This document shows, piece by piece, positions 4,467 to 64,000 of a DNA stretch of 64,000 nt. The notes beneath the pieces were generated by a model. It did no database searches. It was not told the origin of the DNA and was given only the letters and a program-made list of their open reading frames with translations. The first letter of the stretch is position 1; each line of letters starts with the position of its first letter. Source of the DNA: Octopus sinensis (lineage: Eukaryota); contig NC_043003.1 in assembly GCF_006345805.1 (NCBI RefSeq), forward strand, positions 107,570,001 to 107,634,000, written 5' to 3'. Both the position numbers and the translations under genes were made by a program.

Positions 4467-4701
4467 TACCTATTTCTTTATTACCCCCAAGGAGCTAAAC
4501 ACAGAGAGGACAAACAAGGATAGACAAACGGATTAAGTCAATTACATCGACCCCAGTGCGTAACTGGTACTTAATTTACCAACCCTGAAAGGATGAAAGG
4601 CAAAGTCGACCTCAGCGGAATTTGAACTCAGAACGTATTGGCAGACGAAATACAGCTACATATTTTGCCCGGCGTGCTAACGATTCTGCCAGCTTGCCGC
4701 C
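4467..4701 (-). mobile_element. tRNA-derived SINE (family A monomer) nested in an older SINE
   Basis: Minus strand GGCGGCAAGCTGGCAGAATCGTTAG ... GAGTTCAAATTCC ... GTCGACTTTGCCTTTCATCCTTTC; same family as 12247-12730 and 13601-13989. Older SINE halves at ~4405-4466 and ~4710-4840. Confidence 0.85.
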
Positions 4702-10725: not shown

Positions 10726-10764
10726 TATGTGTGTGTGTGTGTGTGTGTATGCATGTATGTATAT

Positions 10765-10798
<34 letters not shown>

Positions 10799-10967
10799 AT
10801 GTTATATATATATATATATATATAATATATATAATATATATATGTATATTATATATATATATGTATATATATATAATATATATATATATTTATATGTACA
10901 TATATATTTATATGTACATATATATATGTATATATATATGTACATATATATATATATATATTATATG

Positions 10968-10998
<31 letters not shown>

Positions 10999-11315
10999 GT
11001 ATATATATATATATGTATGTATATATATGCATGTATGTATGTATGTATATATATGTATATATATATGTATATGTATATATATACGTATATGTATATATAT
11101 GTATATATATATGTATATGTATATATATACGTATATGTATATATATGTATATATATGTATATATATAATATATATATATGTATATATATATAATATATAT
11201 ATATATATGTATTATATATATATATATATATATATAATGTATATATATATATATATATATATATATCTATATATATATATGTATACATATATATATATAT
11301 ATATATATAATATAT

Positions 11316-11397
<82 letters not shown>
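10726..11397. repeat. Long imperfect (TA)n/(TATG)n microsatellite
   Basis: Seen directly; produces spurious YIYI ORFs. Confidence 0.95.
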
Positions 11398-12246: not shown

Positions 12247-12730
12247 GGCGACGAGCTGGCAGAACCGTTAGAATGCCGGGTGAAATGCGTAGCCGTATTT
12301 CGTCTGCCGTTACGTTCTGAGTTCAAATTCCGCCGAGGTCGACTTTGCCTTTCATCCTTTCAGGGTCGATAAATTAAGTACCAGTTACGCACTGGGGTCG
12401 ATATAATCGACTTAATCCGTTGTCTGTCCTTGTTTGTCCTCTCTGTGTATAGCCCCTTGTGGGTAGTAAAGAAATAGGTATTTGAACTTAGAAAGGCGGT
12501 GGGCTGGCAGAAACGTTAGCACGCCGGGCGAAATGCGTAGCCGTATTTCGTCTGCCGTTACGTTCTGAGTTCAAATTCTGCCGAGGTCGACTTTGCCTTT
12601 CATCCTTTCAGGGTCGATTAAATAAGTACCAGCTACGGACTGGGGTCAATATAATCGACTTAATCCATTTGTCTGTCCTTGTTTGTCCTCTCTGTGTGTA
12701 GCCCCCTTGTGGGTAGTAAAGAAATAAGTA
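12247..12730 (+). mobile_element. Two tandem family-A SINE monomers (12247-12480, 12495-12730)
   Basis: Each has a tRNA head, the GTCGACTTTGCCTTTCATCC core and an AAAGAAATA(G/A)GTA end. TATTT(C/G)AACTTAGAA occurs at 12231, 12479 and 12729. Confidence 0.9.
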
Positions 12731-13600
12731 TTTGAACTTAGAACATAAAAAGCCGGAAGAAACATCGCAAGGCATTTTGTCCAACGCTCTGCCAATCTAA
12801 CATTTTTTTTTTTACTTGTTGCGTAGGTCTCAGGCATAGAAAAAAAAGTTAACATTTTGTACAAGTACGCTTGGGTATACACAAACAATAAAGCGGGGGA
12901 GAGATAACGTTAAGGTTAAAAACTTATAACAATAGAAAAAAGTCAATAATGTCAACAAGTAAAGGTCTGTACATCATTTTACAAAAATATTGTTCAAAAT
13001 ATCTAGAAAAAATGCAAAAACTTACAACTAGATATATCAAATGGTCGAGGATTTGAGGATTGAAGTGAGATTAATCCAGTTTACAAGTGAATCACTCGGC
13101 AATTCTGAGCTAGGTCTGAAGATTGAAGTCTCAGAAGTTCTCAGATTATACAATAAATAGAAGATTGCCTGCTTTACTTTGCGCCTCGCCATATATTGTA
13201 TGGAAGGTGAATATGTAAGGCATATGTATAATACAATGGATACTGATCTTGCAACTTATTGCACAGTAATAAAACTCACGTGTACTTTGGTTTAGTCTTT
13301 GGGTACAACTAACGAACTAAACAGGCACATGAAAGCTCATTTATAAACTGGGAAAAGAAAAATAGAATTTACCGTTAATCGGCTATAAACTAGGCATTTT
13401 TGATACTTATAATGGCCCGTGACTTGTGAAGAGAAAATTTTATATTTATTAAATTGTAACGTTGTATTTTATTATGACATCACTCATTCGTTGACGGCAA
13501 CCTAAATCTTCATAAAGGAAAATGCGGGAAAAATATGTATCTATATAAAAAATGGTTTTTGAAATATTTTATTTATGTATTTGTTTCCACTTGGTTCGTT

Positions 13601-13989
13601 ATTTTTTACTCTAGGCACAAGGCCCGAAATTTTGGGAGAGGGGCCAGTCGATTAGATCGACCCCAGTACGCAACTAGTTCTTAATTCATCGATCCCGAAA
13701 GAATGAAAGGCAAAATCGACCTCGGCGGAATTTGAACTCAGAACGTAGCGGCAGACAAAATACCTATTTCTTTACTACCCACAAGGGGCTAAACACAGAG
13801 GGGACAAACAAGAACAGACAAACGGATTAATTCGATTATATCGACCCCAGTGCGTAACTGGTACTTATTTAATCGACCCCGAAAGGCAAAGTCGACCTCG
13901 GCGAAATTTGAACTCAGAACGTAACGGCAGACGAAATACGGCTACGCATTTCGCCCGGCGTGCTAACGTTTCTGCCAGCTCGCCGCCGC
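13601..13989 (-). mobile_element. Dimeric family-A SINE with 14-bp TSD
   Basis: Full monomer followed by a second B-box/core unit with a different tail; CCACTTGGTTCGTT at 13587-13600 and 13990-14003. Confidence 0.88.
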
Positions 13990-14180: not shown

Positions 14181-16265
14181 CACTAGGCAAAAAAAAAAAA
14201 AAGGCTGGTGCCTGGAATATTGAACGAATTCCTGAATGATTTTCCCTGCTAAATTCAAAAATAACTTCAGTTTTTCTCTATCAGGTCTAGTTTTCTGACT
14301 AGACCTGATAGAAAAAGTGTTTTATTCATACGAGATATATAATATGAATCAATAAGGACAGCATAATACAAAACAAAACAAAACTACAAATAAAAATTGA
14401 AAATTGAAAATGCACACTGGCAAAGGTTTTTGGTGGAAAATCCAAGGAAGAAATTTACGCTTCTTTGAGCACCGTGAATGTTGAGCAACAGGAGTATCTC
14501 GTTTTAAGCACCATCATCCCAGCCTCCCAACGTCCTTGGTACTGAGTTTCCATTTGCTCGATGTCCTGATGGAATCGTCTGCCTCGCTCATCGCTAACAT
14601 CTCCGAAATTTTCAGGAAAGTGATCAAGATGACTAAAAAGATAATACATTTTGATGCTCATATTCGCGCCAATATCAAGAAAAGTTGATATCAAATTGGT
14701 AACAAGATCTTTATAGTTTTCAATTTTCTGTTTCTCAAAAACAGTTTGCACTATTTCTGCAAAGGCTAGTCAAGCTGGTGCTTCATTTTCGCTCATCGTT
14801 TTCACGAAATGTGTGCCCTTCAAGAGTTTACGGATATGTGGTCCATCAAAAATCCTTGCTTTAAGTTTTTAAATCGTCAAGTCTGGAAATACACTGCAGA
14901 TATACTTGAAGCACTCCCCATTTTTGTCAAGAGCTTTGACAAATTACTTGATCAATCCGAGTTTGATGTGCAAGAGGAGGGGGGGGGGCAAATGATTTTA
15001 TCTCGCTCACCTAAACGTTCTTCCAATATATTGGCAGCTCTATATGGAACCATATTTGTTCGAGGCGACCAGTCTTTCGTAATATGTAAAGAAAGCATGG
15101 GTATTTGGTATAACAAGATTGCTGTCCCATGAGAGAATTCACGATCTTTAAATCAACGCTGACAACCTATTTATGACCATGATACAGTATCTTCTCTAAA
15201 ACCAACTTAATTTCTTCATATTTTCCCTTTAGAGTTGCTGAGTGGGACAGAGCCACATACATTTCCGTTCCGTAACAATACACATGTTAAACTACGCTTA
15301 GAGCTGTCTATGAAAACACGCCATTCCTCTGGTTTGTATTCTTCAATGTCAAGTTTATTCAGAACCCCACTGACATCTCTGCAGTAAACCAGCGCTTCCT
15401 CTTTTGCGAAGAAAGAAAGGAACTCTTCATGCCGTCCCGATAGCAGCTTATACGGACACCATTCTCTAGAACATTCTTCACTTTCGGTCGGGCAGCCAAC
15501 AGTTCTGCAGAATATTTTGGGAGGTCGAAGTCACGAACCTACTTGGGAGAATAGCTGAGGTAAAGTCTGAACTGAAAGGTCTTGATCTCAAGTGTCTTCT
15601 TCAGGTGATGAATCTTCTTTGGTTGAGGGAAAAGTTATCTGAGACAAGACATTGAAGACCGGTCTAATAGCAGGGGCAAGATTAGGGTAGACAAATGTTT
15701 GTCGATTTTTCCGGTTAATACCCTTCAAATTTAGGTTACAAAAATAGCAGGCGTCCACGTGATTATAGGGCTCCCGCCATATCATTGCTGTATAAAACCC
15801 CATACTTTTCCTTGTCCCTTTCGTCCATTGTCGCAAATGTTCTGTACATTGTTTGCAGACTCTATGTGGTGCCCAATATTTATCTGGGTCTTCCAGCTTG
15901 ACCCCAAAATATGCCATATACGCCCTTTCAACAAAATCAGTGATATTTTTTCGATTTTCAGGTAATGTGTATTCTCCACAAATATAATAAAACACATTTG
16001 GAGAATTAATGCAACACTTTCTTGAAGAGGACATCTTGCTCATTTTCTATTGCTTAGTTCACCACAACATCTAAAAAGTATGGAAAAGGAAAAATAAACT
16101 TAGAATTAGAATAAGGTAACGAACACTGCGTACTTACTATGGGGATGTTCAATAACTTAAAAACTAGATCTGATAGGTCAAAAAGGTTATATTTGGATAC
16201 AGGAGACCGATTTTGTATAGGAATGATATCTATTTCCTAAACACCAAAAACCTTATAGATCAGTG
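14181..16265 (-). mobile_element. Chapaev3 (CMC superfamily) DNA transposon, pseudogenised transposase
   Basis: N-terminus SRKCCINSPNVFYYICGEYT...WAPHRVCKQC...WREPYNHVDACYFC and C-terminus SIKMYYLFSHLDHFPENFGDVSDERGRRFHQDI..METQYQGRW are diagnostic. Termini CAC...GTG flanked by TAA on both sides; subterminal ACTAGA(C/T)CTGATAG motifs at both ends. Confidence 0.9.
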
Positions 16266-16599
16266 TAATCATAGGAAGTTGTTCCAACCGAATGTATAAA
16301 GGATATAGACAACTGCGTGGAGGAAACTCCGGGGTCACTTGAAGTAGCAGCGAAATATTCCTCGAATCGTATTCAACCTTCTTAAGTATGGACACAGTGA
16401 ACATTGGTTTCAAATTTTGGCACAAAGCCACTAATTTCAGGGGAGGGGTAAGTCGATTACATCGACTCCAACTGCTCAACTGCTACTTATTTTATCGACC
16501 CCGAAAACATGAAAGGCAAAGTCAACCCCGGTGGAATTTGAACTCAGAACGTAAAGACGAACGAAATGCCGCTAATCTTTATAAAGAAGTGCCGATCTC

Positions 16600-31621: not shown

Positions 31622-32800
31622 ATCCTCGATGATAGTGATGCTGTTGACATCGTTTTATTGGACTTTGCCAAAGCTTTTGACTCGGTAAACCACCGCCTAT
31701 TACTTGTCAAGCTTCAAGCATAGTTTCCATCCGGATATTATACGATGGGTTGGTGCCTTCCTCTCAGATCGCTCCTTCCAAGTCCAAGTTAATGGTTCGC
31801 GGTCCGACGTCTCCAGTGCGAGCAGTGGCGTGCCTCAAGGTTCAGTGCTTGGGCCCTTGTTGTTCTTAGTCTTCATAAATGACTTGCCCGACGACTTCAC
31901 GCAACACACCCTTCTATTTGCCGACGATATCAAACTGGTCGCTCCTCGCGGTAATATAGAGGATCTTCGTCGATGCCTCCACCAAATTTGGAAGTGGTCT
32001 AACGATTGGGACCTGTGTCTGAACGTGTCAAAGTGCTGTCATCTGCCTGTCGGCTCTACTCCTGCAACTCAACTTGATTTCGAGCCGGGTCGTCTGCTGC
32101 TGGAGAGGACCGATCAGGTAAAGGACTGGGTATCTTGGTGGATTCCTCCTTTTCGCCTTCGGCCCAGTGCGTCCATGCTGCCAACAAAGCACGCGGAATT
32201 CTGTTCTTGATTCGACGGTCATTCGGAATGCTCACAGCAGCCATATTCCTACCACTCTATGTCACGCTGGTGAGACCCATATTGGAGTATGGGATTCAAG
32301 CCTCTTCTCCTTATCTCCTCAAAGACATACAGCATCTCGAAAGAGTCCAGAAGCTGGCTACCCGCATGGTTCATGGTCTCAAAAATTTGTCCTACGAAGA
32401 AAGGCTGAGGACGCTCGACCTTTATTCTCTTGAAAAACGCCGCCGCCGTGGTGATCTCATTCTCGCCCACAACATTATAAGCGGAAAGTGTAACCTCTCG
32501 AAAGAGCTGTTCTTCACTCCTGCTCCGGAGCGTCGGCTGCGAGGTTATTCCGAAAAGCTCTACCTGCGACGATTTCATCTCAATCGAAGGAGAGGAGCTT
32601 TCTCCGTCCGGGTTGCGGATCCGTGGAACAAGCTGCCAGACGAGATGGTGAAGATGCCGACGACCGCTTTGTTCAAAGCCTCCCTGGACCTCAAGTGGCC
32701 TGAACTCTTTACATGAACACCACCCTGTACTTAACTCCATGTCCCCCTACATGGCCTTGCTATTTGCTTTTGAGCCAAATTAACTAACTAACTAACTAAC
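31622..32800 (+). mobile_element. 5'-truncated CR1-type LINE, near-identical to 36825-38012
   Basis: [34 protein letters not shown] motifs; (TAAC)n tail; constant 5203-bp offset to the full copy in the 3' part. Confidence 0.95.
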
Positions 32801-33441
32801 ATAGTCGGCCCCTCCTTGATTTTTCTCAAAGTCAAGGTCACTGTTCGCAAATTCCATCAACACTATTGCAGACAATTTGAACTCTCTTTGACCGATCGTT
32901 CTTCATCTCACTTAATGAACTATTGCTACTGCTGCTATCAGAATTTACTGCTGTTACTACTATCCCTACAATTAGAAACATTCAAGTTGACGATGACACC
33001 GAGATGTCTTTCCCCGTGTCTGAATTATACCGTTGGTGTCTGGCACCAACGAAAAATCCCTTTCTTTCTCTGTGTTGGGAGAAAAGAGAATTTACAATAA
33101 AAACACACCCTCAGCCCTCCCTCCAACGTATAAATTACTATAAAAATAAATACTTTAAAAGGGAAAAACGTGAGAAAAAAAAGAAGAAAAACTTAATAAT
33201 CTAAATTAACGATAGACAAAAACATGTGCCTTCTCGCACATAAACACAGTATTCACACATGTACAAACATGCGCAGACACAATTATTGAAGTACTAAATG
33301 GCACGTCAAATGATATTTAATCGTGTGGAACATGTTACATGCATATCAATATTCTAAAGTTGGACCTACTATCCCTTATCCTAAAGCTGCTTCAGACAAT
33401 TAGGAAGGTTTCCCGACTCGTTTCACCGTCTGCTTTCAATC

Positions 33442-35039
33442 TTGGATTGTGATTCGGCTCAGCCCAAACTCTCAGATTTTGTCTGCTGTTGCCTACTCCT
33501 ACAAGGATTGCAGCTGTTTTTTGTTCCTGATTTAACTCAGATTTGTCCTAGAGCCCATAGAAGATTGTTTTTAGTCAACCATCCATCATGTCAGCTACCT
33601 ACGGATCGAAACAGATCTGCAAGAAGGGCTTCTCATCAAGTTGATGGTCCTACCAATAGTCAGCTCAACGAGCAGTTGCTGTTGCTCAAACAAGAGGTCG
33701 AGCACCTAAAGTCTGTTGTTGCTCTTTTACTGAATAAACAGTCTCCTGTTGACGCAGAGTCACCCTTGGTTTTTTCCCTGGAGACGTCCAAACCGAAGGG
33801 AACAAAATCGAAGCGGCCAAAGAAAGCGAAGGAACCGGCGGTCGTTTCTGCACATGATCGTTCCTGTGCGGATTCTTCCTCATCTGCCTTTTCGGTCCCG
33901 GAGGTTCCCCAACCTAATTTGAGGTGCGTAGACTCAAACCCACCTGAAGACCGTTGTTCTCCCCAAAAGAAGAAACGTAGTCAAAACTCCAGTGGGGCAG
34001 ATTTAGCTATGAAACCTGACCACGATAAACAGTCGACGCAGAGTCACCCTTGATTTCTTCCCTGGAGACGTCCAAACCGAAGGGAACAAAATCGAAGCGG
34101 CCAAAGAAGGCGAAGGAACCGGCGGTCGTTTCTGCACATGATCGTTCCTGTGTGGATTCTTCCTCGTCTGCCTTTTCGGTCCCGGAGATTCCCCAACCTA
34201 ATTTGAGGAGCGTAGACTCAAACCCACCTGAAGACCGTTGTTCTCCCCAAAAGAAGAAACGTAGTCAAAACTCCAGTAGGGCAGATTTGGCTATGAAACC
34301 TGATCACGATAAAATCTGTTTGGATTCTCCCTCACTTGTCCTTCCCATTAATGCCATTGCTCAACCAATTCTGAACGATCTCGATGTGAGTTCATCTGGG
34401 GAGTGGTGCTCCCCCAAACCGAAGAAGAGGCAGTGCAGTTTCAAACCAGGCGGGAAAATTATGACCACTAAACCCATTCCGATCGACCCCACAGGCCGAC
34501 ATAAGTCTGATGGCTATGAAACCACCCTTTCGAAATCATCCAATGAAGAATCGAATACCGCAGCTCATAGTAGAGAACATTTTGCCCACTCAAGATCAGC
34601 AATCATTTATGGTAAAGCTGAATCCACCTGTGATACAGGCATAAACCGCCTAAAAGATGACATTAATTTTGTTTCCATTTTAGTTGGAGAATTGTTCTCT
34701 GTGAACGAAAATGTCTGTGTCCATAAGGTCGCTCGGCTAGGAAGATTCCAAGCGAACCCAACCTCAGATGCCAGACCACGCCCAATAAGGGTAATCTTTT
34801 CTTCCAATCGGGAGGCTTCAGTCTTTCTGAACAGAGCTCAGACGCATGCCTGGGAGGACCCCAATATGGGTTTTCGCGAGGAATACTCACTAAGAGAGAG
34901 AATTCGCCAGAGAAACCTAATATCCGAACTAAAGATGAGGAAACAAATGGGAGAGAAGAGTTTACGCATCCAAGATGGACAGATAATCAAGTCCTACCTC
35001 TGGTCCCATGCTGTAGTGCTGACAGGGAAAGTGAAGTGA
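33442..35039 (+). pseudogene. CR1 ORF1, broken by an internal ~284-bp tandem duplication
   Basis: ORFs 33442-34053 and 34050-35039 share the duplicated peptide SLETSKPKGTKSKRPKK...MKPDHDK. Confidence 0.8.
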
Positions 35040-35129
35040 GGGCAAATCGAAGTGAAGTTGATACCCCCGTCAACGATGCTATCTCTGATACCCCTTATTC
35101 TGCTTGTTCCCCAACTCCCGCCCCTCAGA

Positions 35130-37919
35130 CTTCACAGCTCAGCATCGTCTATACCAACTCGTGCTTCTTATTCCCAAAGTTCAGTGAACTATTTACACTG
35201 GCCATACGTGACTCCCCTGATGTGATAGCTATCACCGAGACTTGGCTGACTCCAGCAGTAAAGGACTCAGAAATCCACCTGCAAGGCTACGTCCTTTTCA
35301 GATGTGACAGGAAAAAGGCGAGGTGGAGGTGTTGCTGTGTATGTTAAGTCTGAGCACAAACCGTCCAGCGGTATTCTACCCACTAATGCTCAACCTACAA
35401 CAAAATTCGATGCCGTCTATTGCAAGCTGAGCCTATCCGAGTTTTGCCTGCCCGTGTTAGCTGTCTACAGGCCGCCTCTTGCCGACCCCAGGACGATGCT
35501 CATTTACTCGAAGCGATAAGATTCGTTTCAGCTTTGCATGACTGTTTGGTACTAGGAGACTTCAACGCTCCCACGATCGATTGGCCCGCATCAATTTGTA
35601 CAACATCTTCCCGGTTCGGCCAGGCCCTTCTTGACGTGGCTGAAGATTGTTTTCTATCGCAACATGTTGAATATCCGACAAGGCATCGGTCTGGGCAGCA
35701 GCCATCTATGCTAGATCTTGTATTCTCCCGCTATCCAAGATCAGTGTCAGACGTATCTGTGTGCGCCCCTCTTGCCAAGAGTGATCATGCGGTCCTGAAG
35801 TTCGTCATGCACACAACTTTTTCTACGCCCACGACTACTTCGCTGCCACGTAGAGTCTTCTCTGCAATTAATCTTGAAATTCTAACCGAGGCTTCCGCGC
35901 TTCTGGACTGGCGATCCCTGATGACGTTGTCCTCAGTTGACGAACTATGGTCATCCCTCAAAGCATATGTAATCTGGTTGACTGACCAGGCAGTTCCCGT
36001 TGGGCTTCCCAAGAAGAAGAAACACAAGCCCTGGGTGACGAAGAAGGTTAAACGAGAACGTCGACTCAGAGATATTGCTTGGGCTGAATTCAAAAATCTG
36101 GATTCGACTGCAGCTTTTGAGGTGTACAAAACTCAACGAGACCGAGCCGTGAAAATTGAAAAGAAAGACCGCTTCAGTTATGAATACAAAATCGCGGCAA
36201 ATGCCAGTAGCAATCCAAAAACCTTCTTTGCCCATGTCCAGTGGAATTCCCGCTTGAACAACCAGATTGCAACGTTGGTAGACTCAACAGGCGTATCGAT
36301 TGAGGACCCTTATCAACAGAGCCAATTATTTGCCGAGGCTTTTTCAACTATTTTCAAACAAGATGATGGTCGTGAACCCCCTCCATTTGATAGATCGGTA
36401 CCTCCAATGCTTCGATTGGTCATCACGCGGGACGAAGTCAAACTTGTTATTCAAGCCTCGATGTCAACAAGGGTCATGGCCCTGACGGCATACACCCACG
36501 GGTTATCAAAGCGTTGGCTCCGGTCATCTGCGAGCCCTTAACACGTCTATTCAATATGTCATTGGCGACGGGTGTTATACCTGCAGACTGGAGAACAGCG
36601 ATAATCTGCCCAATTTTCAAGAAAGGGAGCCGCGAAGACCCGCTTAACTACCGACCGGTTTCCCTTACATCAATAATCAGCAAGATGTTCGAAACCATCC
36701 TTAAGAAAAGTATGATGCTCCACCTCCTAAACACAGCCTCTATCTCTGATTCCCAACACGGCTTCGTGCCGAAGAGATCATGTTTGACCAACTTACTAGT
36801 AATGGAAGAATTGGTGACGCGCATCCACGATGATAGTGATGCTGTTGACATCGTTTTATTGGACTTTGCCAAAGCTTTTGACTCGGTAAACCACCGCCTA
36901 TTACTTGTCAAGCTTCAAGCATATAGTTTCAATCCGGATATTGTACGATGGGTTGGTGCCTTCCTCTCAGATCGCTCCTTCCAAGTCCAAGTTAATGGTT
37001 CGCGGTCCGACGTCTCCAGTGCGAGCAGTGGCGTGCCTCAAGGTTCAGTGCTTGGGCCCTTGTTGTTCTTAGTCTTCATAAATGACTTGCCCGACGACTT
37101 CACGCAACACACCCTTCTATTTGCCGACGATATCAAACTGGTCGCTCCTCGCGGTGATATAGAGGATCTTCGTCGATGCCTCCACCAAATTTGGAAGTGG
37201 TTTAACGATTGGGACCTGTGTCTGAACGTGTCAAAGTGCTGTCATCTGCCTGTTGGCTCTCCTCCTGCAACTCAACTTGATTTCGAGCCGGGTCGTCTGC
37301 TGCTGGAGAGGACCGATCAGGTAAAGGACTGGGTATCTTGGTGGATTCCTCCTTTTCGCCTTCGGCCCAGTGTGTCCATGCTGCCAACAAAGCACGCGGA
37401 ATTCTGTTCTTGATTCGACGGTCATTCGGAATGCTCACAGCAGCCATATTCCTACCACTCTATGTCACGCTGGTGAGACCCATATTGGAGTATGGGATTC
37501 AAGCCTCTTCTCCTTATCTCCTCAAAGACATACAGCATCTCGAAAGAGTCCAGAAGCTGGCTACCCGCATGGTTCATGGTCTCAAAAATTTGTCCTACGA
37601 AGAAAGGCTGAGGACGCTCGACCTTTATTCTCTTGAAAAATGCCGCCGCCGTGGTGATCTCATTCTCGCCCACAACATTATAAGCGGAAAGTGTAACCTC
37701 TCGAAAGAGCTGTTCTTCACTCCTGCTCCGGAGCGTCGGCTGCGAGGTCATTCCGAAAAGCTCTACCTGCGACGATTTCATCTCAATCGAAGGAGAGGAG
37801 CTTTCTCCGTCCGGGTTGCGGATCCGTGGAACAAGCTGCCAGACGAGATGGTGAAGATGCCGACGACCGCTTTGTTCAAAGCCTCCCTGGACCTCAAGTG
37901 GCCTGAACTCTTTACATGA
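35130..37919 (+). pseudogene. CR1 ORF2 (endonuclease + reverse transcriptase), split over several frames
   Basis: Overlapping ORF pieces 35036-35347, 35304-35519, 35420-36541, 36514-37413 and 37338-37919 give continuous APE-RT homology. Confidence 0.92.
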
Positions 37920-43700: not shown

Positions 43701-43972
43701 GTTCTTCTTTTCGGATTATGGCTGCTGTTGCTTAGTGAATGGGATTGACTCAGTGCAGTCTTTCCTCACTTTAAAAAAAATCTTCCTGCACAGGCATTGC
43801 ACGGTGACAACATTGTTCATGATTGTTGATGGTGCTGTGAGTCTCAACTGAATGGCTGGCTGTAGCTTTAAAAAGCAAATAAATGTCACACTCGATCTCA
43901 GCACCAATAATAGTTAAGCTATGGCCATACTCAATAAGGAGGGGGCAGCCAGCCTGTATACATATATGTAAA

Positions 43973-44172
<200 letters not shown>

Positions 44173-44356
44173 TATGCCATTTTGTATTTCTATTGTATGT
44201 GTCTTCATTTGCGCATGCGTATATCTGTATGTGCGTCTATGTTTAGTGAGTATGTGTGTGTGTGGGGAATGCCTATAATATTTGTATCTCCTGTTTATAT
44301 ACGTTCGTGTAATTTGTTTTTGTTTATTTTTATTTTGTTCATGTGTTTACACCCAC

Positions 44357-48847: not shown

Positions 48848-49727
<880 letters not shown>

Positions 49728-50779: not shown

Positions 50780-51100
<321 letters not shown>

Positions 51101-51169
51101 ATATATATTATATATATATATATATATATATTATATAATATATATATATAATATAAATATATAATATAA

Positions 51170-51237
<68 letters not shown>

Positions 51238-51248
51238 TTATGTATATA

Positions 51249-51389
51249 TACTAGCTTAAAAGCCACACTTCGTACGGACTTTTAAGCTAGGTCCAGTGGA
51301 TCGTTAATTGGGCATTCGGCCCAAAACAAAAAGAAAGGCAAAAATAATAAAGCATTTAAATAATAAAGATAATAATATAATATAATAAA

Positions 51390-51423
<34 letters not shown>

Positions 51424-52290
51424 TAATAATAATAATAATAATAATAAAAATAATAAAGATTTATATCACAGAGTATCAAATTTGGAGAATTTTGTATCAC
51501 TGTAAAACAGCAGGATAAACAACATTCTTGGTTTTACCATTTGATGCGAGTATGAAGAGATTGTTGCCATTTCTAAATCTGGAACAACAAAAACAGAGCT
51601 AGTTGGGAAAAGCACTGCTGCATGAGGTGAAGTCCAACCATTTTCAATGACTTTCTTTGACTCTTGTAAGTTGACATTGCATGACTAACTCACACTGAAA
51701 ATTAAAGTCACTTGAATTCAAAGGGCATGTTTGTTGAAATCAGTGAAATTCTTTGAACAAGCACATTTTCTACCATTCCTTGTTCAGTGAAGATTGTTGT
51801 TTCCAAAAGATGTGGATGCATTTGCCTGACAATCAATCTTGTTCTATTGCACAGCTTTGGCAGATCCAGATTCCTCAAAAGCATGATTGGAACTCCTTTC
51901 TTCAATGTCAGTTTGTGGGAAGGCATTCCAGGTGGATCCAAAGAGTTATGAAACTCAGGGTAATTCACAGCCTCATTGGGGTCCACAACAGTATCAGTTG
52001 AGAGATAATTTGTTTCCTCAGTATTGATTGATTGCATAAGTTTCCAACTGACAACCCGGACCGTTTCATTCTTTGGTGCTCTTTCACAAAATCAAACATG
52101 ATCATGAAAATTATGTCCAATATTTAGGTAAACCTTAGTAATCAACTCTTCTACAGTTTGGACCAAAATACCACAGCCATTTGGAAGTGATGTTTCCGTT
52201 ACTGTCTTGCTGAATTCTTCCATTCCCCAGATCCATTAGTTGAGCTGCAAATCTTCCAGCATCCAAATTTCTGAATAAACTAACTCTGCT
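51249..52290 (-). mobile_element. Helitron 3' portion with PIF1-type helicase pseudogene
   Basis: YLSTDTVVDPNEAVNYPEF.NSLDPPGMPSH.LTLKKGVPIMLLRNLD.PKLCN.TRL..; KTKNVVYP.VL; 3' end ...GCTTTTAAGCTAGTAT. Confidence 0.9.
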
Positions 52291-53563: not shown

Positions 53564-53632
<69 letters not shown>

Positions 53633-53646
53633 TATATATATATGTA

Positions 53647-53695
<49 letters not shown>

Positions 53696-53711
53696 TATAT
53701 ATTATATATAT

Positions 53712-53745
<34 letters not shown>

Positions 53746-53776
53746 ACACACACAGACACACACACACAGACACACA

Positions 53777-53815
<39 letters not shown>

Positions 53816-55888: not shown

Positions 55889-55959
<71 letters not shown>

Positions 55960-55972
55960 ACATACATGTATG

Positions 55973-56018
<46 letters not shown>

Positions 56019-56087
56019 CATGTATGTATATGTATATATATACATGTATACTATATATATATATATACATGTATACATACATGTATG

Positions 56088-56140
<53 letters not shown>

Positions 56141-56184
56141 TACATGTATGTATATATATATATACATGTATACTATATATATAT

Positions 56185-56222
<38 letters not shown>

Positions 56223-56237
56223 AACATATAGGTATGT

Positions 56238-56289
<52 letters not shown>

Positions 56290-56577: not shown

Positions 56578-56959
56578 TATGTATGTATGTATATATATAT
56601 ATGTGTGTGTCTCCCCCCCTCTCTCACATTTCTTTGCCTTTCTTACTTTGCACTTCACTGTCCCTGTCTTTCTTTTTTCTCGCCAAGCCTTGACAAGCTC
56701 TCTTTCTTCTCCCCCTCCTTAATTCCTTGTTCCTCTTTTTCTCTCTCTTCTCCCCCTCTTTAATTCCTTTGCCCCCTCTTTTTCTCTCTCTTCTCTTCTC
56801 ACGTGACCGCTGGCCAACTATAGCCCTTTCGCTTCGGACCGCCGTCACGATAACAGCACACCAGTTATGATATCTTTCCTCAGCGTTTCTTCTAAGTTTC
56901 TAACCAAATTTCCTTCTATTCTATTTCTTTCTATCAACGACACCTTATAAATCTTAATA

Positions 56960-59900
56960 TATTCTATTCTATCTGCCATTTTCAGGCCAAACACCATTGG
57001 GGATTGACGCTATCAACACCCACTTAACCAATTCACTAATTCGGTCTCTGTAAGCTTGGCACACCGAGAGTGACGTGTCCAGCTTATAGTAGGTCGACCG
57101 TGCAGATTGCAAATTTGTAGCCTGTGTAACCGATGATTTTAAAAAGTGGACAACTTATGCTATCCTTATTTACTTGCATACAGACTACTCTATCTAGATT
57201 CGACCTAGATTATCTGATGCAATTCGTCCATGTCCTCACTGGCACAATTAGGAAATCCAGGCGTTACCTGTCAGACAGTTGAAAACGTATGAGCAGCTTT
57301 GTGAGGCTTTTGCACCCTCCTCTTCTAACAGTTAGCCCCACACAATATAAACGAGCATCCATGATGGCGTTCTAGTCACACTAAAAATCGAGACTTTCTC
57401 AAGAAATATTTCTAGACTTCTGAAGAAGTTCGGCTGTCCTACCTCTGTTGGAACATAGACAGTCACCAGTCGGAAGACAATCTTCACGTTACTGTTCACA
57501 TCCAAGATCACCAACTTACCTTCTGAGTCCTGGAAGATGGTCCTTATCTTGAGATCCAGGCATTTCTGGAAGGACATCGTAGTCCTCACTCCCATTCCCG
57601 GGTGACATGGAGATAAGTAAATCCCGTTTCAGTCGAAAATTGGTTTGAAAGTTTCTCGATGGAAAGTCTGGTCTTACAGATAGCCACGACATCTATACTT
57701 AGTGACCTGAGGATATTGAGTAGGTGGTCCTGCTTCCAAGGCGACCCTAAGCCATGACATCTATACTTAGTGACCTGAGATTATTGAGTAGGTGGTCCTG
57801 CTTCCAAGGCGACCCTAAGCCACGACATCTATACTTAGTGACCTGAGGATATTGAGTAGGTGGTCCTGCTTCCAAGGCGACCCTAAGCCACGACATCTAT
57901 ACTTAGTGACCTGAGGTTATTGAGTAGGTGGTCCTGCTTCCAAGGCGACCCTAAGCCACGACATCTATACTTAGTGACCTGAGGATATTGAGTAGGTGGT
58001 CCTGCTTCCAAGGCGACCCTAAGCCACGACATCTATACTTAGTGACCTGAGGTTATTGAGTAGGTGGTCCTGCTTCCAAGGCGACCCCAAGCCACGACAT
58101 CTATACTTAGTGACCTGAGGTTATTGAGTAGGTGGTCCTGCTTCCAAGGCGACCCTAAGCCACGACATCTATACTTAGTGACCTGAGGTTATTGAGTCGG
58201 TGGTCCTGCTTCCAAGGCGACCCTAAGCCACGACATCTATACTTAGTGACCTGAGTTATTGAGTAGGTGGTCCTGCTTCCAAGGCGACCCTAAGCCACGA
58301 CATCTATACTTAGTGACCTGAGGTTATTGAGTAGGTGGTCCTGCTTCCAAGGCGACCCTAAGCCACGACATCTATACTTAGTGACCTGAGGTTATTGAGT
58401 AGGTGGTCCTGCTTCCAAGGCGACCCTAAGCCACGACATCTATACTTAGTGACCTGAGGTTATTGAGTAGGTGGTCCTGCTTCCAAGGCGACCCTAAGCC
58501 ACGACATCTATACTTAGTGACCTGAGGTTATTGAGTAGGTGGTCCTGCTTCCAAGGCGACCCTAAGCCACAACATCTATACTTAGTGACCTGAGGTTATT
58601 GAGTAGGTGGTCCTGCTTCCAAGGCAACCCTAAGCCACGACATCTATACCTAGTGACCTGAGGTTATTGAGTAGGTGGTCCTGCTTCCAGGCGACCCTAA
58701 GCCACGACATCTATACTTAGTGACCTGAGGTTATTGAGTAGGTGGTCCTGCTTCCAGGCGACCCTAAGCCACGACATCTATACTTAGTGACCTGAGGTTA
58801 TTGAGTAGGTGGTCCTGCTTCCAAGCGACCCCAAGCCACGACATCTATACTTAGTGACCTGAAGTTATTGAGTAGGTGGTCCTGCTTCCAAGGCGACCCT
58901 AAGCCACGACATCTATACTTAGTGACCTGAGGTTATTGAGTAGGTGGTCCTGCTTCCAAGGCGACCCCAAGCCACGACATCTATACTTAGTGACCTGAGG
59001 TTATTGAGTAGGTGGTCCTGCTTCCAAGGCGACCCTAAGCCACGACATCTATACTTAGTGACCTGAGGTTATTGAGTCGGTGGTCCTGCTTCCAAGGCGA
59101 CCCTAAGCCACGACATCTATACTTAGTGACCTGAGGTTATTGAGTAGGTGGTCCTGCTTCCAAGGCGACCCCAAGCCACGACATCTATACTTAGTGACCT
59201 GAGGTTATTGAGTAGGTGGTCCTGCTTCCAAGGCGACCCTAAGCCACGACATCTATACTTAGTGACCTGAGGTTATTGAGTCGGTGGTCCTGCTTCCAAG
59301 GCGACCCTAAGCCACGACATCTATACTTAGTGACTGAGGTTATTGAGTAGGTGGTCCTGCTTCCAAGGCGACCCTAAGCCACGACATCTATACTTAGTGA
59401 CCTGAGGTTATTGAGTAGGTGGTCCTGCTTCCAAGGCGACCCTAAGCCACGACATCTATACTTAGTGACCTGAGGTTATTGAGTAGGTGGTCCTGCTTCC
59501 AAGGCGACCCTAAGCCACGACATCTATACTTAGTGACCTGAGGTTATTGAGTCGGTGGTCCTGCTTCAAGGCGACCCTAAGCCACGACATCTATACTTAG
59601 TGACCTGAGGTTATTGAGTAGGTGGTCCTGCTTCCAAGGCGACCCTAAGCCACGACATCTATACTTAGTGACCTGAGGTTATTGAGTAAGTGGTCCTGCT
59701 TCCAAGGCGACCTAAGCCACGACATCTATACTGAGTGACCTGAGGTTATTGAGTAGGTGGTCCTGCTTCCAAGGCGACCCTAAGCCACGACATCTATACT
59801 TAGTGACCTGAGGTTATTGAGTAGGTGGTCCTGCTTCCAAGGCGACCCTAAGCCACGACATCTATACTTAGTGACTGAGGTTATTGAGTAGGTGGTCCTG

Positions 59901-62760
59901 CTTCCAAGGCGACCCCAAGCCACGACATCTATACTTAGTGACCTGAGGTTATTGAGTAGGTGGTCCTGCTTCCAAGGCGACCCTAAGCCACGACATCTAT
60001 ACTTAGTGACCTGAGGTTATTGAGTAGGTGGTCCTGCTTCCAAGGCGACCCTAAGCCACGACATCTATACTTAGTGACCTGAGGTTATTGAGTAGGTGGT
60101 CCTGCTTCCAAGGCGACCCTAATCCACGACATCTATACTTAGTGACCTGAGGTTATTGAGTCGGTGGTCCTGCTTCCAAGGCGACCCTAAGCCACGACAT
60201 CTATACTTAGTGACCTGAGGTTATTGAGTAGGTGGTCCTGCTTCCAAGGCGACCCCAAGCCACGACATCTATACTTAGTGACCTGAGGTTATTGAGTAGG
60301 TGGTCCTGCTTCCAGGCGACCCTAAGCCACGACATCTATACTTAGTGACCTGAGGTTATTGAGTCGGTGGTCCTGCTTCCAAGGCGACCCTAAGCCACGA
60401 CATCTATACTTAGTGACCTGAGGTTATTGAGTAGGTGGTCCTGCTTCCAAGGCGACCCTAAGCCACGACATCTATACTTAGTGACCTGAGGTTATTGAGT
60501 AGGTGGTCCTGCTTCCAAGGCGACCCTAAGCCACGACATCTATACTTAGTGACCTGAGGTTATTGAGTAGGTGGTCCTGCTTCCAAGGCGACCCTAAGCC
60601 ACGACATCTATACTTAGTGACCTGAGGTTATTGAGTCGGTGGTCCTGCTTCCAAGGCGACCCTAAGCCACGACATCTATACTTAGTGACCTGAGGTTATT
60701 GAGTAGGTGGTCCTGCTTCCAAGGCGACCCTAAGCCACGACATCTATACTTAGTGACCTGAGGTTATTGAGTAAGTGGTCCTGCTTCCAAGGCGACCCTA
60801 AGCCACGACATCTATACTGAGTGACCTGAGGTTATTGAGTAGGTGGTCCTGCTTCCAAGGCGACCCTAAGCCACGACATCTATACTTAGTGACCTGAGGT
60901 TATTGAGTAGGTGGTCCTGCTTCCAAGGCGACCCTAAGCCACGACATCTATACTTAGTGACCTGAGGTTATTGAGTAGGTGGTCCTGCTTCCAGGCGACC
61001 CTAAGCCACGACATCTATACTTAGTGACCTGAGGTTATTGAGTAGGTGGTCCTGCTTCCAAGGCGACCCTAAGCCACGACATCTATACTTAGTGACCTGA
61101 GGTTATTGAGTAGGTGGTCCTGCTTCCAGGCGACCCTAAGCCACGACATCTATACTTAGTGACCTGAGGTTATTGAGTAAGTGGTCCTGCTTCCAAGGCG
61201 ACCCTAAGCCACGACATCTATACTGAGTGACCTGAGGTTATTGAGTAGGTGGTCCTGCTTCCAAGGCGACCCTAAGCCACGACATCTATACTTAGTGACC
61301 TGAGGTTATTGAGTCGGTGGTCCTGCTTCCAAGGCGACCCTAAGCCGTGTGCATTTATACTGCTTATTCCGAGCAAGGCCATGTTTGTCGGAGAGAAGGT
61401 GAGTGAAGAGAATCGCCCTATTTCTTTGGAGAGATAGGTGTTCCCTCCTGGCTATTTGTGGATGTCTCCACAAGCATTTCTATGTTGGGTTTTTCTGTAT
61501 ACTGCTCCATTGGAATCTTCCATTTCTTTGGGATATTTTGCTTTCAGTTTGTTGTTTTTATCAATTTTAGGTGAATAGGAGTGTTATGCGGGTGTTCCAT
61601 GGATTCATTTAGAGTAATATTTGTGTATTTTTGAATATGTTTTATTAAGTTTTTATCGTTTGTGCCTATGACCGTGTAACTAGTGCTGTCTTGGAAGTGC
61701 TGTTCATGTTGTTGGTCTGGATTGCTACGTGTTTTCGTTTGTTGCGGTGTTTGAAGCGTTGATGTTGGTTTAGTGTGTGTGGGCGTGTGTTGGTTCGTTG
61801 GTTTCTGTGTCACCTCTTCTAATCCCTTTTTTGGTCTTGTACCGCATTGTTCATTTTGTAATTGTTTTCATTTTCCTTTCACCAGGATCCATTCTTGTGA
61901 TTTTTTCAAAATTACTTTCCTCACTAGACGAGTTTTCACAGTCGGAGAAATTTGTGGCAGGAGAGAGAAGAAAGCCGGTGATCTGTTCGGTTGGTGTGTG
62001 TGAGACTTCTCTCAGTTGCAACAGTGTAGGAGGTTGTTATAGTTTTTCTCAGGTGTAGTGCCGTTGCTTGCTGCTGACGTTGTTGAGTGGATCACTCCCG
62101 CTGCTCCTTCAGTTGATGTTGTTTTAGATGTTGCTGCTCTTGGCACTGATGCTGTTGGTGTTGTTGTTGGTGCTGCGGCTGTTGCTAATGTTGTTGTGTT
62201 AACGGTGTCGATTTCTGTGCCTAACTAACATTCCTTTCCATTTTGTGCACTTGGAGAATTGATTTATTCACTATGCCATATAATATGGCTGCCATCAGCA
62301 AAGAGCTATCCATGTCTGGTGGTGCCTCTGCTACCTTTATTCAGTCCTTCTCCGACCGAGGTATGTCAAAATTGGCCCCTATTCCCCACTTTTGAAGGTT
62401 GTTGCACCTTCTTTCGCTTTTTCTTCAGTTTGGAATCTCACCTCAACTGTGCCAAAGCATCTCGCACGGGAGAGATAAGTTTCTATTCACCAGATTGGTT
62501 TTAGGCATTTTTCAATCTTGGCCTGCTTCGCTCTCTCCAGTCTCCTGGTTATTGATGTAGATAATAGTTTTTTTTGTAGTATATTTTTGTATTTCCTTTG
62601 GCGTGTTTAAAAATATTGTTCTTCCATTCTTTGGTAAGTGCGATTTGGCATCACTTAACGTTTTTCCGACGCATTAACTTTCTCCTGTCGACGACTCACT
62701 TATGCGAAACCGTTCCCATTTTGTTTAGAAATAAGAACGGACATTGTTTCCGTTGTATTC
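56960..62760 (-). mobile_element. Degenerate Tx1/L1-clade LINE (5'UTR, ORF1, APE domain of ORF2; RT missing), split by a minisatellite
   Basis: ORF1 fragments IEKCLKPIW...RARCFGTVEVRFQTEEKAKE...LTYLGRR (62260-62600). ORF2 starts at 61382 MALLGISSINAHGLGSPWKQDHLLNNLRSLSIDVVAICKTRL, then DSEGKLVILDV...FRLVTVYVPT...FF and WTWT..SRS.LDRV. Confidence 0.85.
57683..61346. repeat. 68-bp tandem minisatellite, about 54 copies
   Basis: Unit GCCACGACATCTATACTTAGTGACCTGAGGTTATTGAGTAGGTGGTCCTGCTTCCAAGGCGACCCTAA; period 68 (e.g. 57955 to 58023); no spacers. Confidence 0.98.
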
Positions 62761-62769
62761 TTTTCTGCT

Positions 62770-62888
62770 CTAGGCACAAGGCCCGAAATTTTGGGGGAGG
62801 GAGCCAGTCGGTTAGATCGACCCTAGTACGCAAATGGCACTTAATTTATCGACCCCGAAAGGATGAAAGGTAAAGTCGACCTCGGCGG
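62770..62888 (-). mobile_element. Family-A SINE 3' fragment
   Basis: CTAGGCACAAGGCCCGAAATTTTGGGG...GTCGACCTCGGCGG as in 13610-13730. Confidence 0.8.
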
Positions 62889-63019
62889 GGTGTTTCTGTA
62901 ATATATTGTGTTGGTGATGGTAGTGGTGGTGGTGGCGGTGTATTTGCTGTTGTTGCTTCCTTTTCACATTGCTCTCTTTTGTTGTTCACGTGATGGCGAT
63001 GTTGAAACTTACGATAAAC

Positions 63020-63258
63020 GTCACCCTTTTCAAGCCTAGCCAGACTCATGGGCCCGGTTTCCCGGTTTCTGTGGCGTATGTGTTCCCCCCAGCTGGACGG
63101 GACGCCAGTCTATCGCAGCGTTACTCAAGAAACAGGAAGAGAGCGTGAGAGAAAGTTGTGGCGAAAGAGTACAATAGGGGTCACCACTGTACCCGGCCAG
63201 AGACTCGTGGAGCTTTTAGGTGTTTTCGCTCAATAAACACACACAACGCCCGGTCTGG
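63020..63258 (-). mobile_element. SINE body (same family as 753-1057)
   Basis: Shared GTGTTTAT.GAGCGAAA.CACCTAAA and GA.AGACTGGCGTCCCGTCCAG segments. Confidence 0.75.
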
Positions 63259-63419
63259 GAACTACAGATGAAGAAAACTAACCAGTTCTCCAAGCTTATG
63301 GTTAGTTTATCTATAAAACGATAACAAATGTGCAATACATAACCTTGTGTAACAATAGAAATAATAACAAACTTACAGGAGTGATGTACAATATACGTTG
63401 ATAGACGAATAAAATAATA

Positions 63420-63620
63420 ATGGTTTCCAATTTTAGCACAAAACCAGTAAATTCAGGGGAGGGGGTAAATCGATTACATTGACCCCAATGTTTAACTAGT
63501 ACTTATTTTATCGACTCCGAATGGATGAAAAGCAAAGTCGACCTTGGCGAAATTTGAACTCAGGACGAAACGCTGCCAAGCATTTTACCTGGCGTTTTAA
63601 CTATTCTGCTAGCTCACCAC
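63420..63620 (-). mobile_element. Diverged family-A SINE
   Basis: GATGAAAAGCAAAGTCGACCTTGGCGAAATTTGAACTCAG core and head remnants. Confidence 0.75.
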
Positions 63621-64000
63621 CCTCACCATCTTCTTGATAATAATAGTAATAATAATAATAAGCGGATAAAACGATTTCATTTTGTACAAGAGAAAAAAAT
63701 GGGATGTAGTTGTTCAACAGGTAATGCAGTGTGTGTTGCTTCAAGCGATTTACTGGGCGTTTATCAATTACTGTGCAGAGTTGGTACCAGTCAGTGTTAC
63801 AGTTCGGTCTTGTATCTGGTTATAGTAAACCAGGGTAGTGATAAATGCTGTTACATAAGGCGCTAGTTCTGGGCAACTCGGGACCTCGAGGCAATTTCAT
63901 TTCGATGTTGAATTCACAATACTAATTATTTCTCGAACATTAAACTAAATTACATCATACTTTGATTGCCATTGAAGTTAACGTTCTACACTCCAATAAA

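What the first reader, a model, noticed from the sequence alone, without database searches (positions are those of the whole stretch)
57683..61346. A 3.7-kb minisatellite born from the endonuclease coding sequence of a dead Tx1 LINE
Seen: on the minus strand the 68-bp unit encodes (L)GSPWKQDHLLNNLRSLSIDVVA. Collapsing the array to one unit restores a continuous N-terminus MALLGISSINAHG-LGSPWKQDHLLNNLRSLSIDVVA-ICKTRL, which resembles L1/Tx1 APE endonucleases. ORF1 lies on one side and the rest of the APE on the other. Both edges share a 4-bp microhomology AGCC (gatAGCCacg, taAGCCgtg). 68 is not a multiple of 3, so this is not a protein repeat. Units are almost identical while the host LINE is heavily decayed. 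Inference: a recent microhomology-seeded tandem amplification (rolling-circle or slippage/unequal exchange) captured at its birthplace, giving a clean example of satellite origin from a TE.
Basis: partly seen in the sequence, partly recalled or inferred. Interest (0 to 1): 0.75.

Follow-up and report, generated by a model that had tools for sequence, protein, structure and literature searches.

The report
Minisatellite born inside a dead LINE
A 68-bp piece of the endonuclease gene of a long-dead L1/Tx1-type retrotransposon copy has been copied head to tail 54 times at its original site. It is a clean but ordinary example of how tandem repeats arise from transposable elements.

Summary
Window 57682-61346 is a 68-bp tandem array of 54 units plus 4 bp, and the units differ from their consensus by 1.2%.

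The core interpretation is also supported. With the array collapsed to one unit, the minus strand reads MALLGISSINAH-GLGSPWKQDH(L/R)LNNLRSLSIDVVA-ICKTRLS. This is colinear, without gaps, with the ORF2 N-terminus of every relative recovered. Those relatives include an intact 232-aa AP-endonuclease domain (P0065) and a nearly full-length element (L005). Each carries exactly one copy of the segment.

The host copy is dead. It has at least 4 stops and 2 frameshifts, the catalytic E, D and H are lost, and there is no reverse transcriptase.

Both array edges carry AGCC. Variants recur in multi-unit blocks (P=0.0004), which favours slippage followed by unequal exchange over a single rolling-circle burst.

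Three points remain unproven:
- Tx1 rather than L1 in the broad sense. The relatives' RT is closest to human L1 ORF2p, and a relative's ORF1 has a CCHC knuckle.
- The ORF1 remnant, for which the evidence is only positional and marginal.
- The true array length, and whether the unit has spread in the source genome, which is not in any collection I could search.

Satellites and minisatellites derived from transposable elements, including from LINE ORF2, are well documented. This is a new member of a known kind, of modest interest.

The parts
57682..61346 (-). 68-bp tandem array: 54 units (43 of 68 bp, 11 of 67 bp) plus a terminal 4 bp. It is derived from codons 13-35 of the LINE ORF2 (AP-endonuclease N-terminus).
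   Evidence: TRF; unit segmentation and variants; tblastn of P0065 residues 11-35 onto every unit.
61347..61382 (-). ORF2 start codon (61382-61380) and first 12 codons, MALLGISSINAH. This is the upstream flank of the array.
   Evidence: Sequence; collapsed translation; alignment to the ORF2 starts of L005, L003 and L004, including the conserved sequence 5' of the ATG.
57093..57681 (-). Remainder of the AP-endonuclease domain, decayed: at least 4 in-frame stops, at least 2 frameshifts, and the catalytic E (ICKTR where relatives have ITETR), D and H (YTGYKF where relatives have YTDHKF) lost.
   Evidence: tblastn with P0065; tblastx with L001 and L002; tblastn with the L005 endonuclease.
57332..57595 (-). 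Longest surviving ORF of the endonuclease (87 aa), used as the query that recovered the family.
   Evidence: the ORF listing. The full HMMER search gave 64 hits at E up to 0.001, the best at 2e-13; all but three are short fragments of the same family.
56848..57092 (-). Post-endonuclease linker remnant. Detectable LINE homology ends here, and there is no reverse transcriptase in this copy.
   Evidence: tblastx and tblastn with L001, L002 and L005 end at about 56845-56851. The L005 RT matches only an unrelated LINE at 36466-37089.
61418..62549 (-). Probable ORF1 remnant: an upstream reading frame with a T/P/N-rich tail. Its stop at 61420-61418 lies 35 nt before the ORF2 ATG.
   Evidence: The stop-to-ATG layout matches relative L004. 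Window 62549-62324 gives a marginal RRM-like match to the ORF1 of L006 (2 of 1000 shuffles). There is no Pfam hit and no significant tblastn or tblastx hit.
57682..57685 (.). AGCC: first 4 bp of the array, one arm of the 4-bp direct repeat.
   Evidence: Sequence.
61343..61346 (.). AGCC: the 4 bp after the last full unit, the other arm of the direct repeat. The two arms were 68 bp apart in the ancestral sequence.
   Evidence: Sequence. Relatives have only GCC in common at the two sites.

Best explanation
A 5' fragment of an L1-superfamily (Tx1-like) LINE lies on the minus strand of this window. It comprises a probable ORF1 tail and about the first 290 codons of ORF2, and it has no reverse transcriptase.

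Inside its already inactive endonuclease coding region, a 68-bp segment was duplicated in place. The segment spans codons 13-35, between the first beta-strand motif (INAHG) and the catalytic-Glu motif. It was bounded by two AGCC tetranucleotides 68 bp apart. The most likely cause is replication slippage or microhomology-mediated misrepair between those short direct repeats, as in the Haber and Louis model of minisatellite birth.

Once two units existed, out-of-register pairing expanded the array to 54 units and kept it homogeneous. This could be unequal sister-chromatid exchange, repair synthesis or further slippage, each event involving one to many units. The array is non-coding and has no demonstrated function.

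Shown: the array, its colinearity with single-copy relatives, the dead state of the host copy, the 4-bp repeat, and the block-wise variant pattern. Inferred: the order of events, the molecular mechanism and the recency.
For: **Array.** It is real and highly regular.

**Colinearity with relatives.**
- The collapsed locus is colinear with the intact endonuclease domain P0065 in three frames: residues 5-42, 45-130 and 141-232, 45-60% identity, E about 1e-49.
- It aligns with L005 at 73% nucleotide identity over 727 bp.
- The alignment crosses both junctions without gaps for the three closest relatives.
- Eleven independent relatives have a single copy of the segment.

**Family identity.** Relatives carry PF03372, and L005 also has RVT_1 and zf-RVT.

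**State of the host copy.** It has stops and frameshifts and has lost catalytic residues.

**Microhomology.** AGCC lies at both edges. The chance of a continuation of 4 bp or more is about 0.4%.

**Variant structure.**
- Of the 43 differences from the consensus, 32 are variants shared by several units.
- Three-unit motifs recur 7 times against 0.9 expected (P=0.0004).
- The left-edge units carry private variants.

**Divergence.** The unit is as diverged from L005 (78% identity) as the flanks are (66-75%), while the units differ from each other by only 1.2%.

**Literature.** The model is set out in PMC6947457.
Against: - The microhomology is only 4 bp, shorter than the 5-10 bp of the classical model. 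A longer imperfect repeat next to it is not significant (P=0.09).
- All relatives are at most about 80% identical in DNA and probably come from other species. Paralogues from the same genome that might carry the array could not be examined.
- No reads were available to confirm the array length.
- The unit shows no unusual single-strand structure that would favour slippage.
Confidence: 0.78

Rival explanations
1. Rolling-circle amplification. A 68-bp (or few-unit) circle excised at the AGCC microhomology was replicated as a concatemer and re-integrated by homology at its own locus, producing most of the array in one burst.
For: The units are very homogeneous: 21 of 54 are identical to the consensus and mean divergence is 1.2%. 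A 4-bp junction microhomology is also compatible with circle formation.
Against: Three quarters of the differences are shared variants that recur in ordered multi-unit motifs (P=0.0004), and one edge carries private variants. A single burst followed by independent mutation predicts mostly singletons. A 68-bp circle is very small. Nothing in the sequence specifically calls for this route.
Confidence: 0.1
2. The array is not native to this locus. It arose earlier in a (non-autonomous) LINE subfamily or as a dispersed satellite, and this is one of many copies carrying it.
For: Same-genome paralogues could not be searched. The source genome is absent from the collections: no self-hit, no exact protein on record, and no megablast match.
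Against: All eleven relatives examined have one unit. The array destroys ORF2, with stops in every frame, so no autonomous element could carry it. The unit is absent from the other 60 kb of the window. The flanks are seamlessly LINE on both sides.
Confidence: 0.07
3. Assembly artefact. The true locus has far fewer, or a different number of, units, and a long-read assembler mis-sized the repeat.
For: Eleven units have 1-bp deletions at short runs, for example CCAAGG to CCAGG. That is the error type of noisy long reads, and tandem arrays are often mis-sized.
Against: The units are not clones of one another. Substitution variants are ordered in reproducible blocks, and the same deletion recurs in clustered units. 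This looks like real sequence. Even a shorter array would leave the interpretation unchanged.
Confidence: 0.05

Closest known systems
TE-derived minisatellites formed by slippage or unequal exchange between short direct repeats (Haber and Louis 1998 model, as reviewed in PMC6947457; survey of the human genome in PMC3389668)
   Same: A segment of tens of base pairs inside a transposable element, bounded by a short direct repeat, is amplified in place into a homogeneous head-to-tail array. Expansion proceeds by local duplication of units.
   Different: The flanking repeat here is 4 bp rather than the 5-10 bp usually quoted. The donor is the coding N-terminus of a LINE endonuclease in an invertebrate-like, microsatellite-rich genome, not an Alu, B1 or LTR.
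Satellites derived from LINE ORF2: PROsat (Phodopus roborovskii, L1 ORF2), Pvc20 (Phoca vitulina, L1 ORF2) and chicken HinfI/SCR1 (CR1 3' UTR plus part of ORF2), listed in PMC9659126
   Same: The repeat unit is homologous to part of a LINE ORF2 coding sequence.
   Different: Those are abundant genome-wide satellites whose locus of origin is no longer visible. Here a single 3.7-kb array is still embedded, in register, in the donor element, so both ancestral junctions can be read.
Tandem monomer arrays of LINE 5' ends (for example mouse L1 A/Tf monomers)
   Same: Tandem repeats physically inside a LINE.
   Different: Those lie in the 5' UTR, act as promoters and are carried by every member of the subfamily. 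This array interrupts ORF2, is non-coding and is absent from all relatives examined.
L1-superfamily / Tx1-clade LINEs
   Same: In relatives, ORF2 has an N-terminal AP-endonuclease, an RT closest to human L1 ORF2p and a C-terminal zf-RVT. The ORF1 of a relative has a CCHC knuckle, which makes it type I. PMC5203782 describes type I as consistent with Tx1.
   Different: No Tx1 reference sequence was available for a phylogeny. The window copy has neither RT nor a 3' end, so target specificity cannot be assessed.

Membership tests
TE-derived minisatellite born in situ | Head-to-tail array with a unit of tens of base pairs | tested here: met
   Period 68, 54 units, 97% matches.
TE-derived minisatellite born in situ | The unit corresponds to a segment that is single-copy in other members of the TE family | tested here: met
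   Eleven relatives have one copy each. In the DNA alignment the three closest relatives have no gap at or near either junction.
TE-derived minisatellite born in situ | Both flanks continue the TE sequence in register | tested here: met
   The collapsed locus reads through in one frame and matches P0065 residues 5-232 in order.
TE-derived minisatellite born in situ | A short direct repeat bounds the ancestral unit (5-10 bp in the classical model) | tested here: inconclusive
   Only 4 bp (AGCC) are exact. The longer imperfect similarity is not significant (P=0.09).
TE-derived minisatellite born in situ | Length polymorphism between individuals | not testable with these tools
   No reads or other individuals are available.
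L1 superfamily, Tx1 clade LINE | ORF2 begins with an AP-type endonuclease | tested here: met
   Relatives carry PF03372 and the window aligns with them. The window's own stitched sequence gives no Pfam hit and only weak matches to APE1 (E 0.6-2).
L1 superfamily, Tx1 clade LINE | RT of the L1 group | tested here: inconclusive
   The RT of relative L005 matches human L1 ORF2p at 1.5e-41 against 1e-22 for R2, and L005 has zf-RVT. The window copy itself has no RT, and other LINE clades have no solved structure to compare with.
L1 superfamily, Tx1 clade LINE | Type-I ORF1 (RRM plus CCHC knuckle) rather than Transposase_22 | tested here: inconclusive
   The ORF1 of distant relative L006 has zf-CCHC, and L007 shows a degenerate knuckle. 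In the window there is only a marginal RRM-like match and no intact CCHC motif.
L1 superfamily, Tx1 clade LINE | RT phylogeny groups with Tx1 references rather than L1 proper | not testable with these tools
   No Tx1 or Repbase reference sequences are available. No hit of either profile search that belongs to this LINE family carries a source name.
L1 superfamily, Tx1 clade LINE | Sequence-specific insertion site (many Tx1 members) | not testable with these tools
   The 3' end of this copy is missing.
Genome-wide satellite DNA family | Many long arrays at several loci | not testable with these tools
   There is one locus in the window. Exact 25-mers of the unit are absent from the JGI metagenome and GTDB contigs, but the host genome is not in those collections.
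Protein-coding tandem repeat | Unit length a multiple of 3, with an open frame through the array | tested here: not met
   68 bp; the longest ORF in the array is 21 aa.
LINE 5' monomer (promoter) array | Array in the 5' UTR and shared by the members of the subfamily | tested here: not met
   The array starts after codon 12 of ORF2, and the relatives lack it.

The most novel reading that the evidence does not exclude
This locus is the still-recognisable progenitor of a 68-bp satellite that has begun, or is about to begin, spreading to other chromosomal sites in the source genome, or that feeds small-RNA production against the LINE family. That would make it a rare case in which a satellite's birth site and its later dispersal can both be read. 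Nothing here excludes this, because the source genome could not be searched.
Probability: 0.06. Interest if true: 0.55.

Novelty: new member of a known kind. Interest (0 to 1): 0.25.

Why it matters
This is a tidy, fully resolved example of minisatellite birth. The donor element, both ancestral junctions, the 4-bp repeat at the break points and the internal history of block duplications can all be read from one locus. That makes it useful for teaching and for repeat annotation, because a repeat masker would otherwise split one LINE fragment into two pieces with an 'unknown satellite' between them. It does not change the current view of how such arrays arise. About a quarter of human minisatellites and satellites derive from transposable elements (PMC3389668), and satellites derived from LINE ORF2 are already described (PMC9659126).

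Tried and rejected
**Searches with the window's own decayed endonuclease.**
- Pfam on the stitched endonuclease and on all three frames of the upstream region found nothing.
- The word-indexed protein search with the stitched sequence found nothing.
- Only the exact 87-aa window ORF worked.
- Three long hits from that search (P0012, P0013, P0027) are repeat-driven false positives from bacteria-like proteins.

**Solved structures.** The stitched endonuclease gave only weak, consistently placed APE1 matches (E 0.6-2). P0081 gave none.

**Looking for the unit elsewhere.**
- Two exact 25-mers of the unit were scanned against JGI metagenome contigs, and one of them also against GTDB genome contigs. 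There were no matches.
- This is uninformative about spread, because the host genome is not in those collections.

**Identifying the source organism.**
- An exact-protein lookup of a window ORF was not on record.
- Paper searches for the assembly and run accessions of the relatives (GCA_024449705, SRR118693xx) found nothing useful.
- No locus gives a megablast match to the window.

**Ideas tested and dropped.**
- A longer imperfect direct repeat as the seed of the first duplication: not significant (P=0.09).
- Hairpin-driven slippage: the unit folds no better than shuffled sequence.
- A known RNA family in the window: no Rfam match.

**ORF1.** tblastn and tblastx with the ORF1 regions of L006 and L007 were not significant. 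There was one marginal local alignment.

**Tx1 references.** No supplementary sequences are held for PMC5203782.
Full report
**1. The observation**

Tandem Repeats Finder reports one array at window 57682-61346 with period 68, 54.1 copies, 97% matches, no indels at its resolution, and score 7043. Cutting it unit by unit gives 54 units followed by the four bases AGCC. Of the units, 43 are 68 bp and 11 are 67 bp with a single-base deletion. The only correction is that the array starts at 57682.

On the minus strand the consensus unit encodes GLGSPWKQDHLLNNLRSLSIDVVA. No reading frame in the array stays open for more than 21 codons, so it is not a protein repeat. The unit has no copy anywhere else in the 64-kb window.

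**2. What the array sits in**

I removed all but one unit: left flank to 57681, one unit, then AGCC and the right flank. The minus strand then reads, in one frame, MALLGISSINAH-GLGSPWKQDH(R/L)LNNLRSLSIDVVA-ICKTRLSIEKL… from an ATG at 61382-61380.

The window's own sequence is too decayed for direct annotation:
- A frame-stitched translation hits no Pfam family.
- It finds nothing in the word-indexed protein search.
- It gives only weak matches to human APE1 (E 0.6-2). These are placed consistently at the start of the nuclease fold.

The longest surviving ORF is 87 aa (57332-57595, minus strand). A full HMMER search with it found 64 proteins at E up to 0.001, the best at 2e-13. Nearly all are short fragments of one family from short-read assemblies. 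Three long hits are repeat-driven false positives.

Profiles built from these fragments recovered hundreds more relatives. Many carry Pfam PF03372, Exo_endo_phos. Two are especially useful:
- P0065 is an uninterrupted 232-aa endonuclease domain that begins MAIRVGCLNVRGLGSAWKQGHLLNDLRSLNMDVVAITETRIS.
- L005 is a 3.9-kb contig whose ORF2 begins MAELKIGCINARGLGSPWKQGRLLNDLRSLDIDVVAVSETRIS. It continues through the endonuclease into RVT_1 and zf-RVT domains.

**3.

- tblastn of P0065 against the collapsed locus gives three ordered pieces: residues 5-42, 45-130 and 141-232. They lie in three different frames at 45-60% identity, with a joint E of about 1e-49.
- At the DNA level the collapsed locus aligns with L005 at 73% identity over 727 bp.
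- A multiple alignment with L005, L003, L004 and L001 runs across both former array junctions. The three closest relatives have no gap at or near either junction.
- Eleven relatives carry a recognisable copy of the segment, and each has only one: P0065, P0067, P0069, P0061, P0054, P0045, P0070, P0076, L005, L007, and P0010, where it is partly deleted.

So the flanks do join in frame and intact relatives do not carry the array.

**4. State of the host element**

Relative to P0065, the endonuclease region contains at least four in-frame stops and at least two frameshifts. The catalytic Glu is lost (ICKTR where relatives have ITETR). The Asp-His pair is lost (YTGYKF where relatives have YTDHKF). 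The roles of these residues come from established knowledge of APE1 and L1-EN.

Homology to relatives stops at about 56848, roughly 290 codons into ORF2. After that the sequence turns into simple repeats. The reverse transcriptase of L005 finds only an unrelated LINE at 36.5-37.1 kb. This is therefore a dead 5' fragment, which is unusual for a LINE, since copies are normally truncated at the 5' end.

Upstream, a reading frame with a T/P/N-rich tail ends at 61420-61418, 35 nt before the ORF2 ATG. Relative L004 has the same layout. Further up, 62549-62324 gives a marginal RRM-like alignment to the ORF1 of relative L006 (2 of 1000 shuffles). Ordinary searches find nothing significant there. An ORF1 remnant is probable but not proven.

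**5. Which LINE**

- The RT of L005 matches human L1 ORF2p at 1.5e-41 and R2 proteins at 1e-22 or worse.
- L005 has the zf-RVT domain.
- The ORF1 of L006 has a CCHC knuckle, and L007 shows a degenerate one.

Ivancevic et al. describe RRM/zf-CCHC (type I) ORF1s in non-mammalian animals as consistent with the Tx1 clade (PMC5203782). In a gastropod survey the L1 superfamily is represented by Tx1 (PMC11203168).

The label 'Tx1' is therefore reasonable. I could test only L1-superfamily affinity, and only in relatives. No Tx1 reference sequences were available for a phylogeny.

**6. How the array grew**

- Units differ from their consensus at 43 of 3672 positions (1.17%), and 21 units are identical to it.
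- Of the 43 differences, 32 are variants shared by two to eight units.
- These recur in ordered motifs: [67C, consensus, 41C] three times and [42A, 19G] three times.
- Units 1-5, at the edge next to the downstream flank, carry private variants.
- Shuffling the order of the units reproduces the observed recurrence of three-unit motifs (7 pairs against 0.9 expected) in only 0.04% of trials.

This is the signature of repeated out-of-register duplication of blocks of units, that is, unequal exchange or slippage. It does not fit one rolling-circle burst followed by independent mutation.

The first duplication plausibly used the two AGCC tetranucleotides 68 bp apart. Relatives share only GCC at these two sites. 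A longer imperfect repeat beside them is not significant (P=0.09). The unit has no unusual single-strand fold.

The unit is as diverged from L005 (78% identity) as the flanks are (66-75%), while the units differ from each other by about 1%. This agrees with amplification, or continuing homogenisation, long after the copy diverged from its family. An absolute date cannot be given without a mutation rate and an outgroup locus.

**7. What could not be tested**

The source genome is not in any collection I could reach:
- There was no self-hit.
- No exact protein was on record.
- No locus has a high-identity match to the window.

Exact 25-mers of the unit are absent from the JGI metagenome and GTDB contigs. 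This says nothing about the host. Whether the unit exists at other loci, whether same-genome paralogues carry the array, and whether reads support 54 units all remain open.

The 1-bp deletions could be long-read errors. However, the commonest one recurs in clustered units, which looks like real inherited variation.

**8. Comparison with what is known**

Minisatellite birth by slippage or unequal exchange between very short direct repeats inside transposable elements is the standard model (Haber and Louis, as reviewed in PMC6947457). At least 23% of human minisatellites and satellites derive from transposable elements (PMC3389668). Satellites derived from LINE ORF2 are listed for Phodopus (PROsat), harbour seal (Pvc20) and chicken (HinfI/CR1) (PMC9659126).

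This locus differs only in being caught in place with both junctions legible, and in coming from the endonuclease N-terminus of a Tx1-like element.

**9. Verdict**

The locus is a new member of a known kind. I put interest at about 0.25.

Noticed in passing
window 31704-37919 (+): A second, unrelated LINE is nearly intact. Its ORFs carry Exo_endo_phos_2 (35420-36541) and RVT_1 (36514-37413). A partial second copy lies 5 kb upstream, and the 193-aa ORFs at 32135-32716 and 37338-37919 differ at two residues. This looks like a recently active family or a local duplication.
   Followed up: partly
window 33751-34313: A 284-bp segment is present as two tandem copies (96% identical) inside the ORF1-like region of that second LINE. 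This is another young tandem duplication within a LINE coding region, at the two-unit stage.
   Followed up: no
window 56848 and downstream (lower coordinates) to about 55000: The Tx1-like copy ends abruptly about 290 codons into ORF2 and is followed by CT-rich and (TA)n simple repeats. It is a 5' fragment without RT or 3' end, the opposite of the usual 5' truncation of LINEs. This implies a later deletion or rearrangement.
   Followed up: partly
window 62758-63621, with copies at about 816-1046, 4534-4694, 12253-12662, 13599-13987 and 16405-16554: A short interspersed repeat of about 80-240 bp (72-89% identity between copies) lies just upstream of the LINE fragment and recurs elsewhere in the window. 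It resembles a SINE or MITE and was not classified.
   Followed up: no
window 51708-52037 (-): An ORF fragment with a Pif1 helicase 2B domain (E 1.3e-16), typical of Helitron-type elements.
   Followed up: partly
window 10756-11397, 43957-44175, 49136-49386, 50994-51250, 53569-53813, 55892-56289: The window has very many long (TA)n and (AC)n microsatellites, up to 640 bp. This is a microsatellite-rich animal genome. The organism could not be identified.
   Followed up: no
P0068 (relative, not in the window): A 73-aa fragment of this LINE endonuclease family is deposited in NCBI and UniRef as a hypothetical protein of Escherichia coli, on a 313-bp contig. It is almost certainly eukaryotic contamination of a bacterial assembly.
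   Followed up: no
window 15588-16043 (-): A 151-aa ATG-initiated ORF, cysteine-rich and resembling a transposon-associated protein, with no Pfam match.
   Followed up: no
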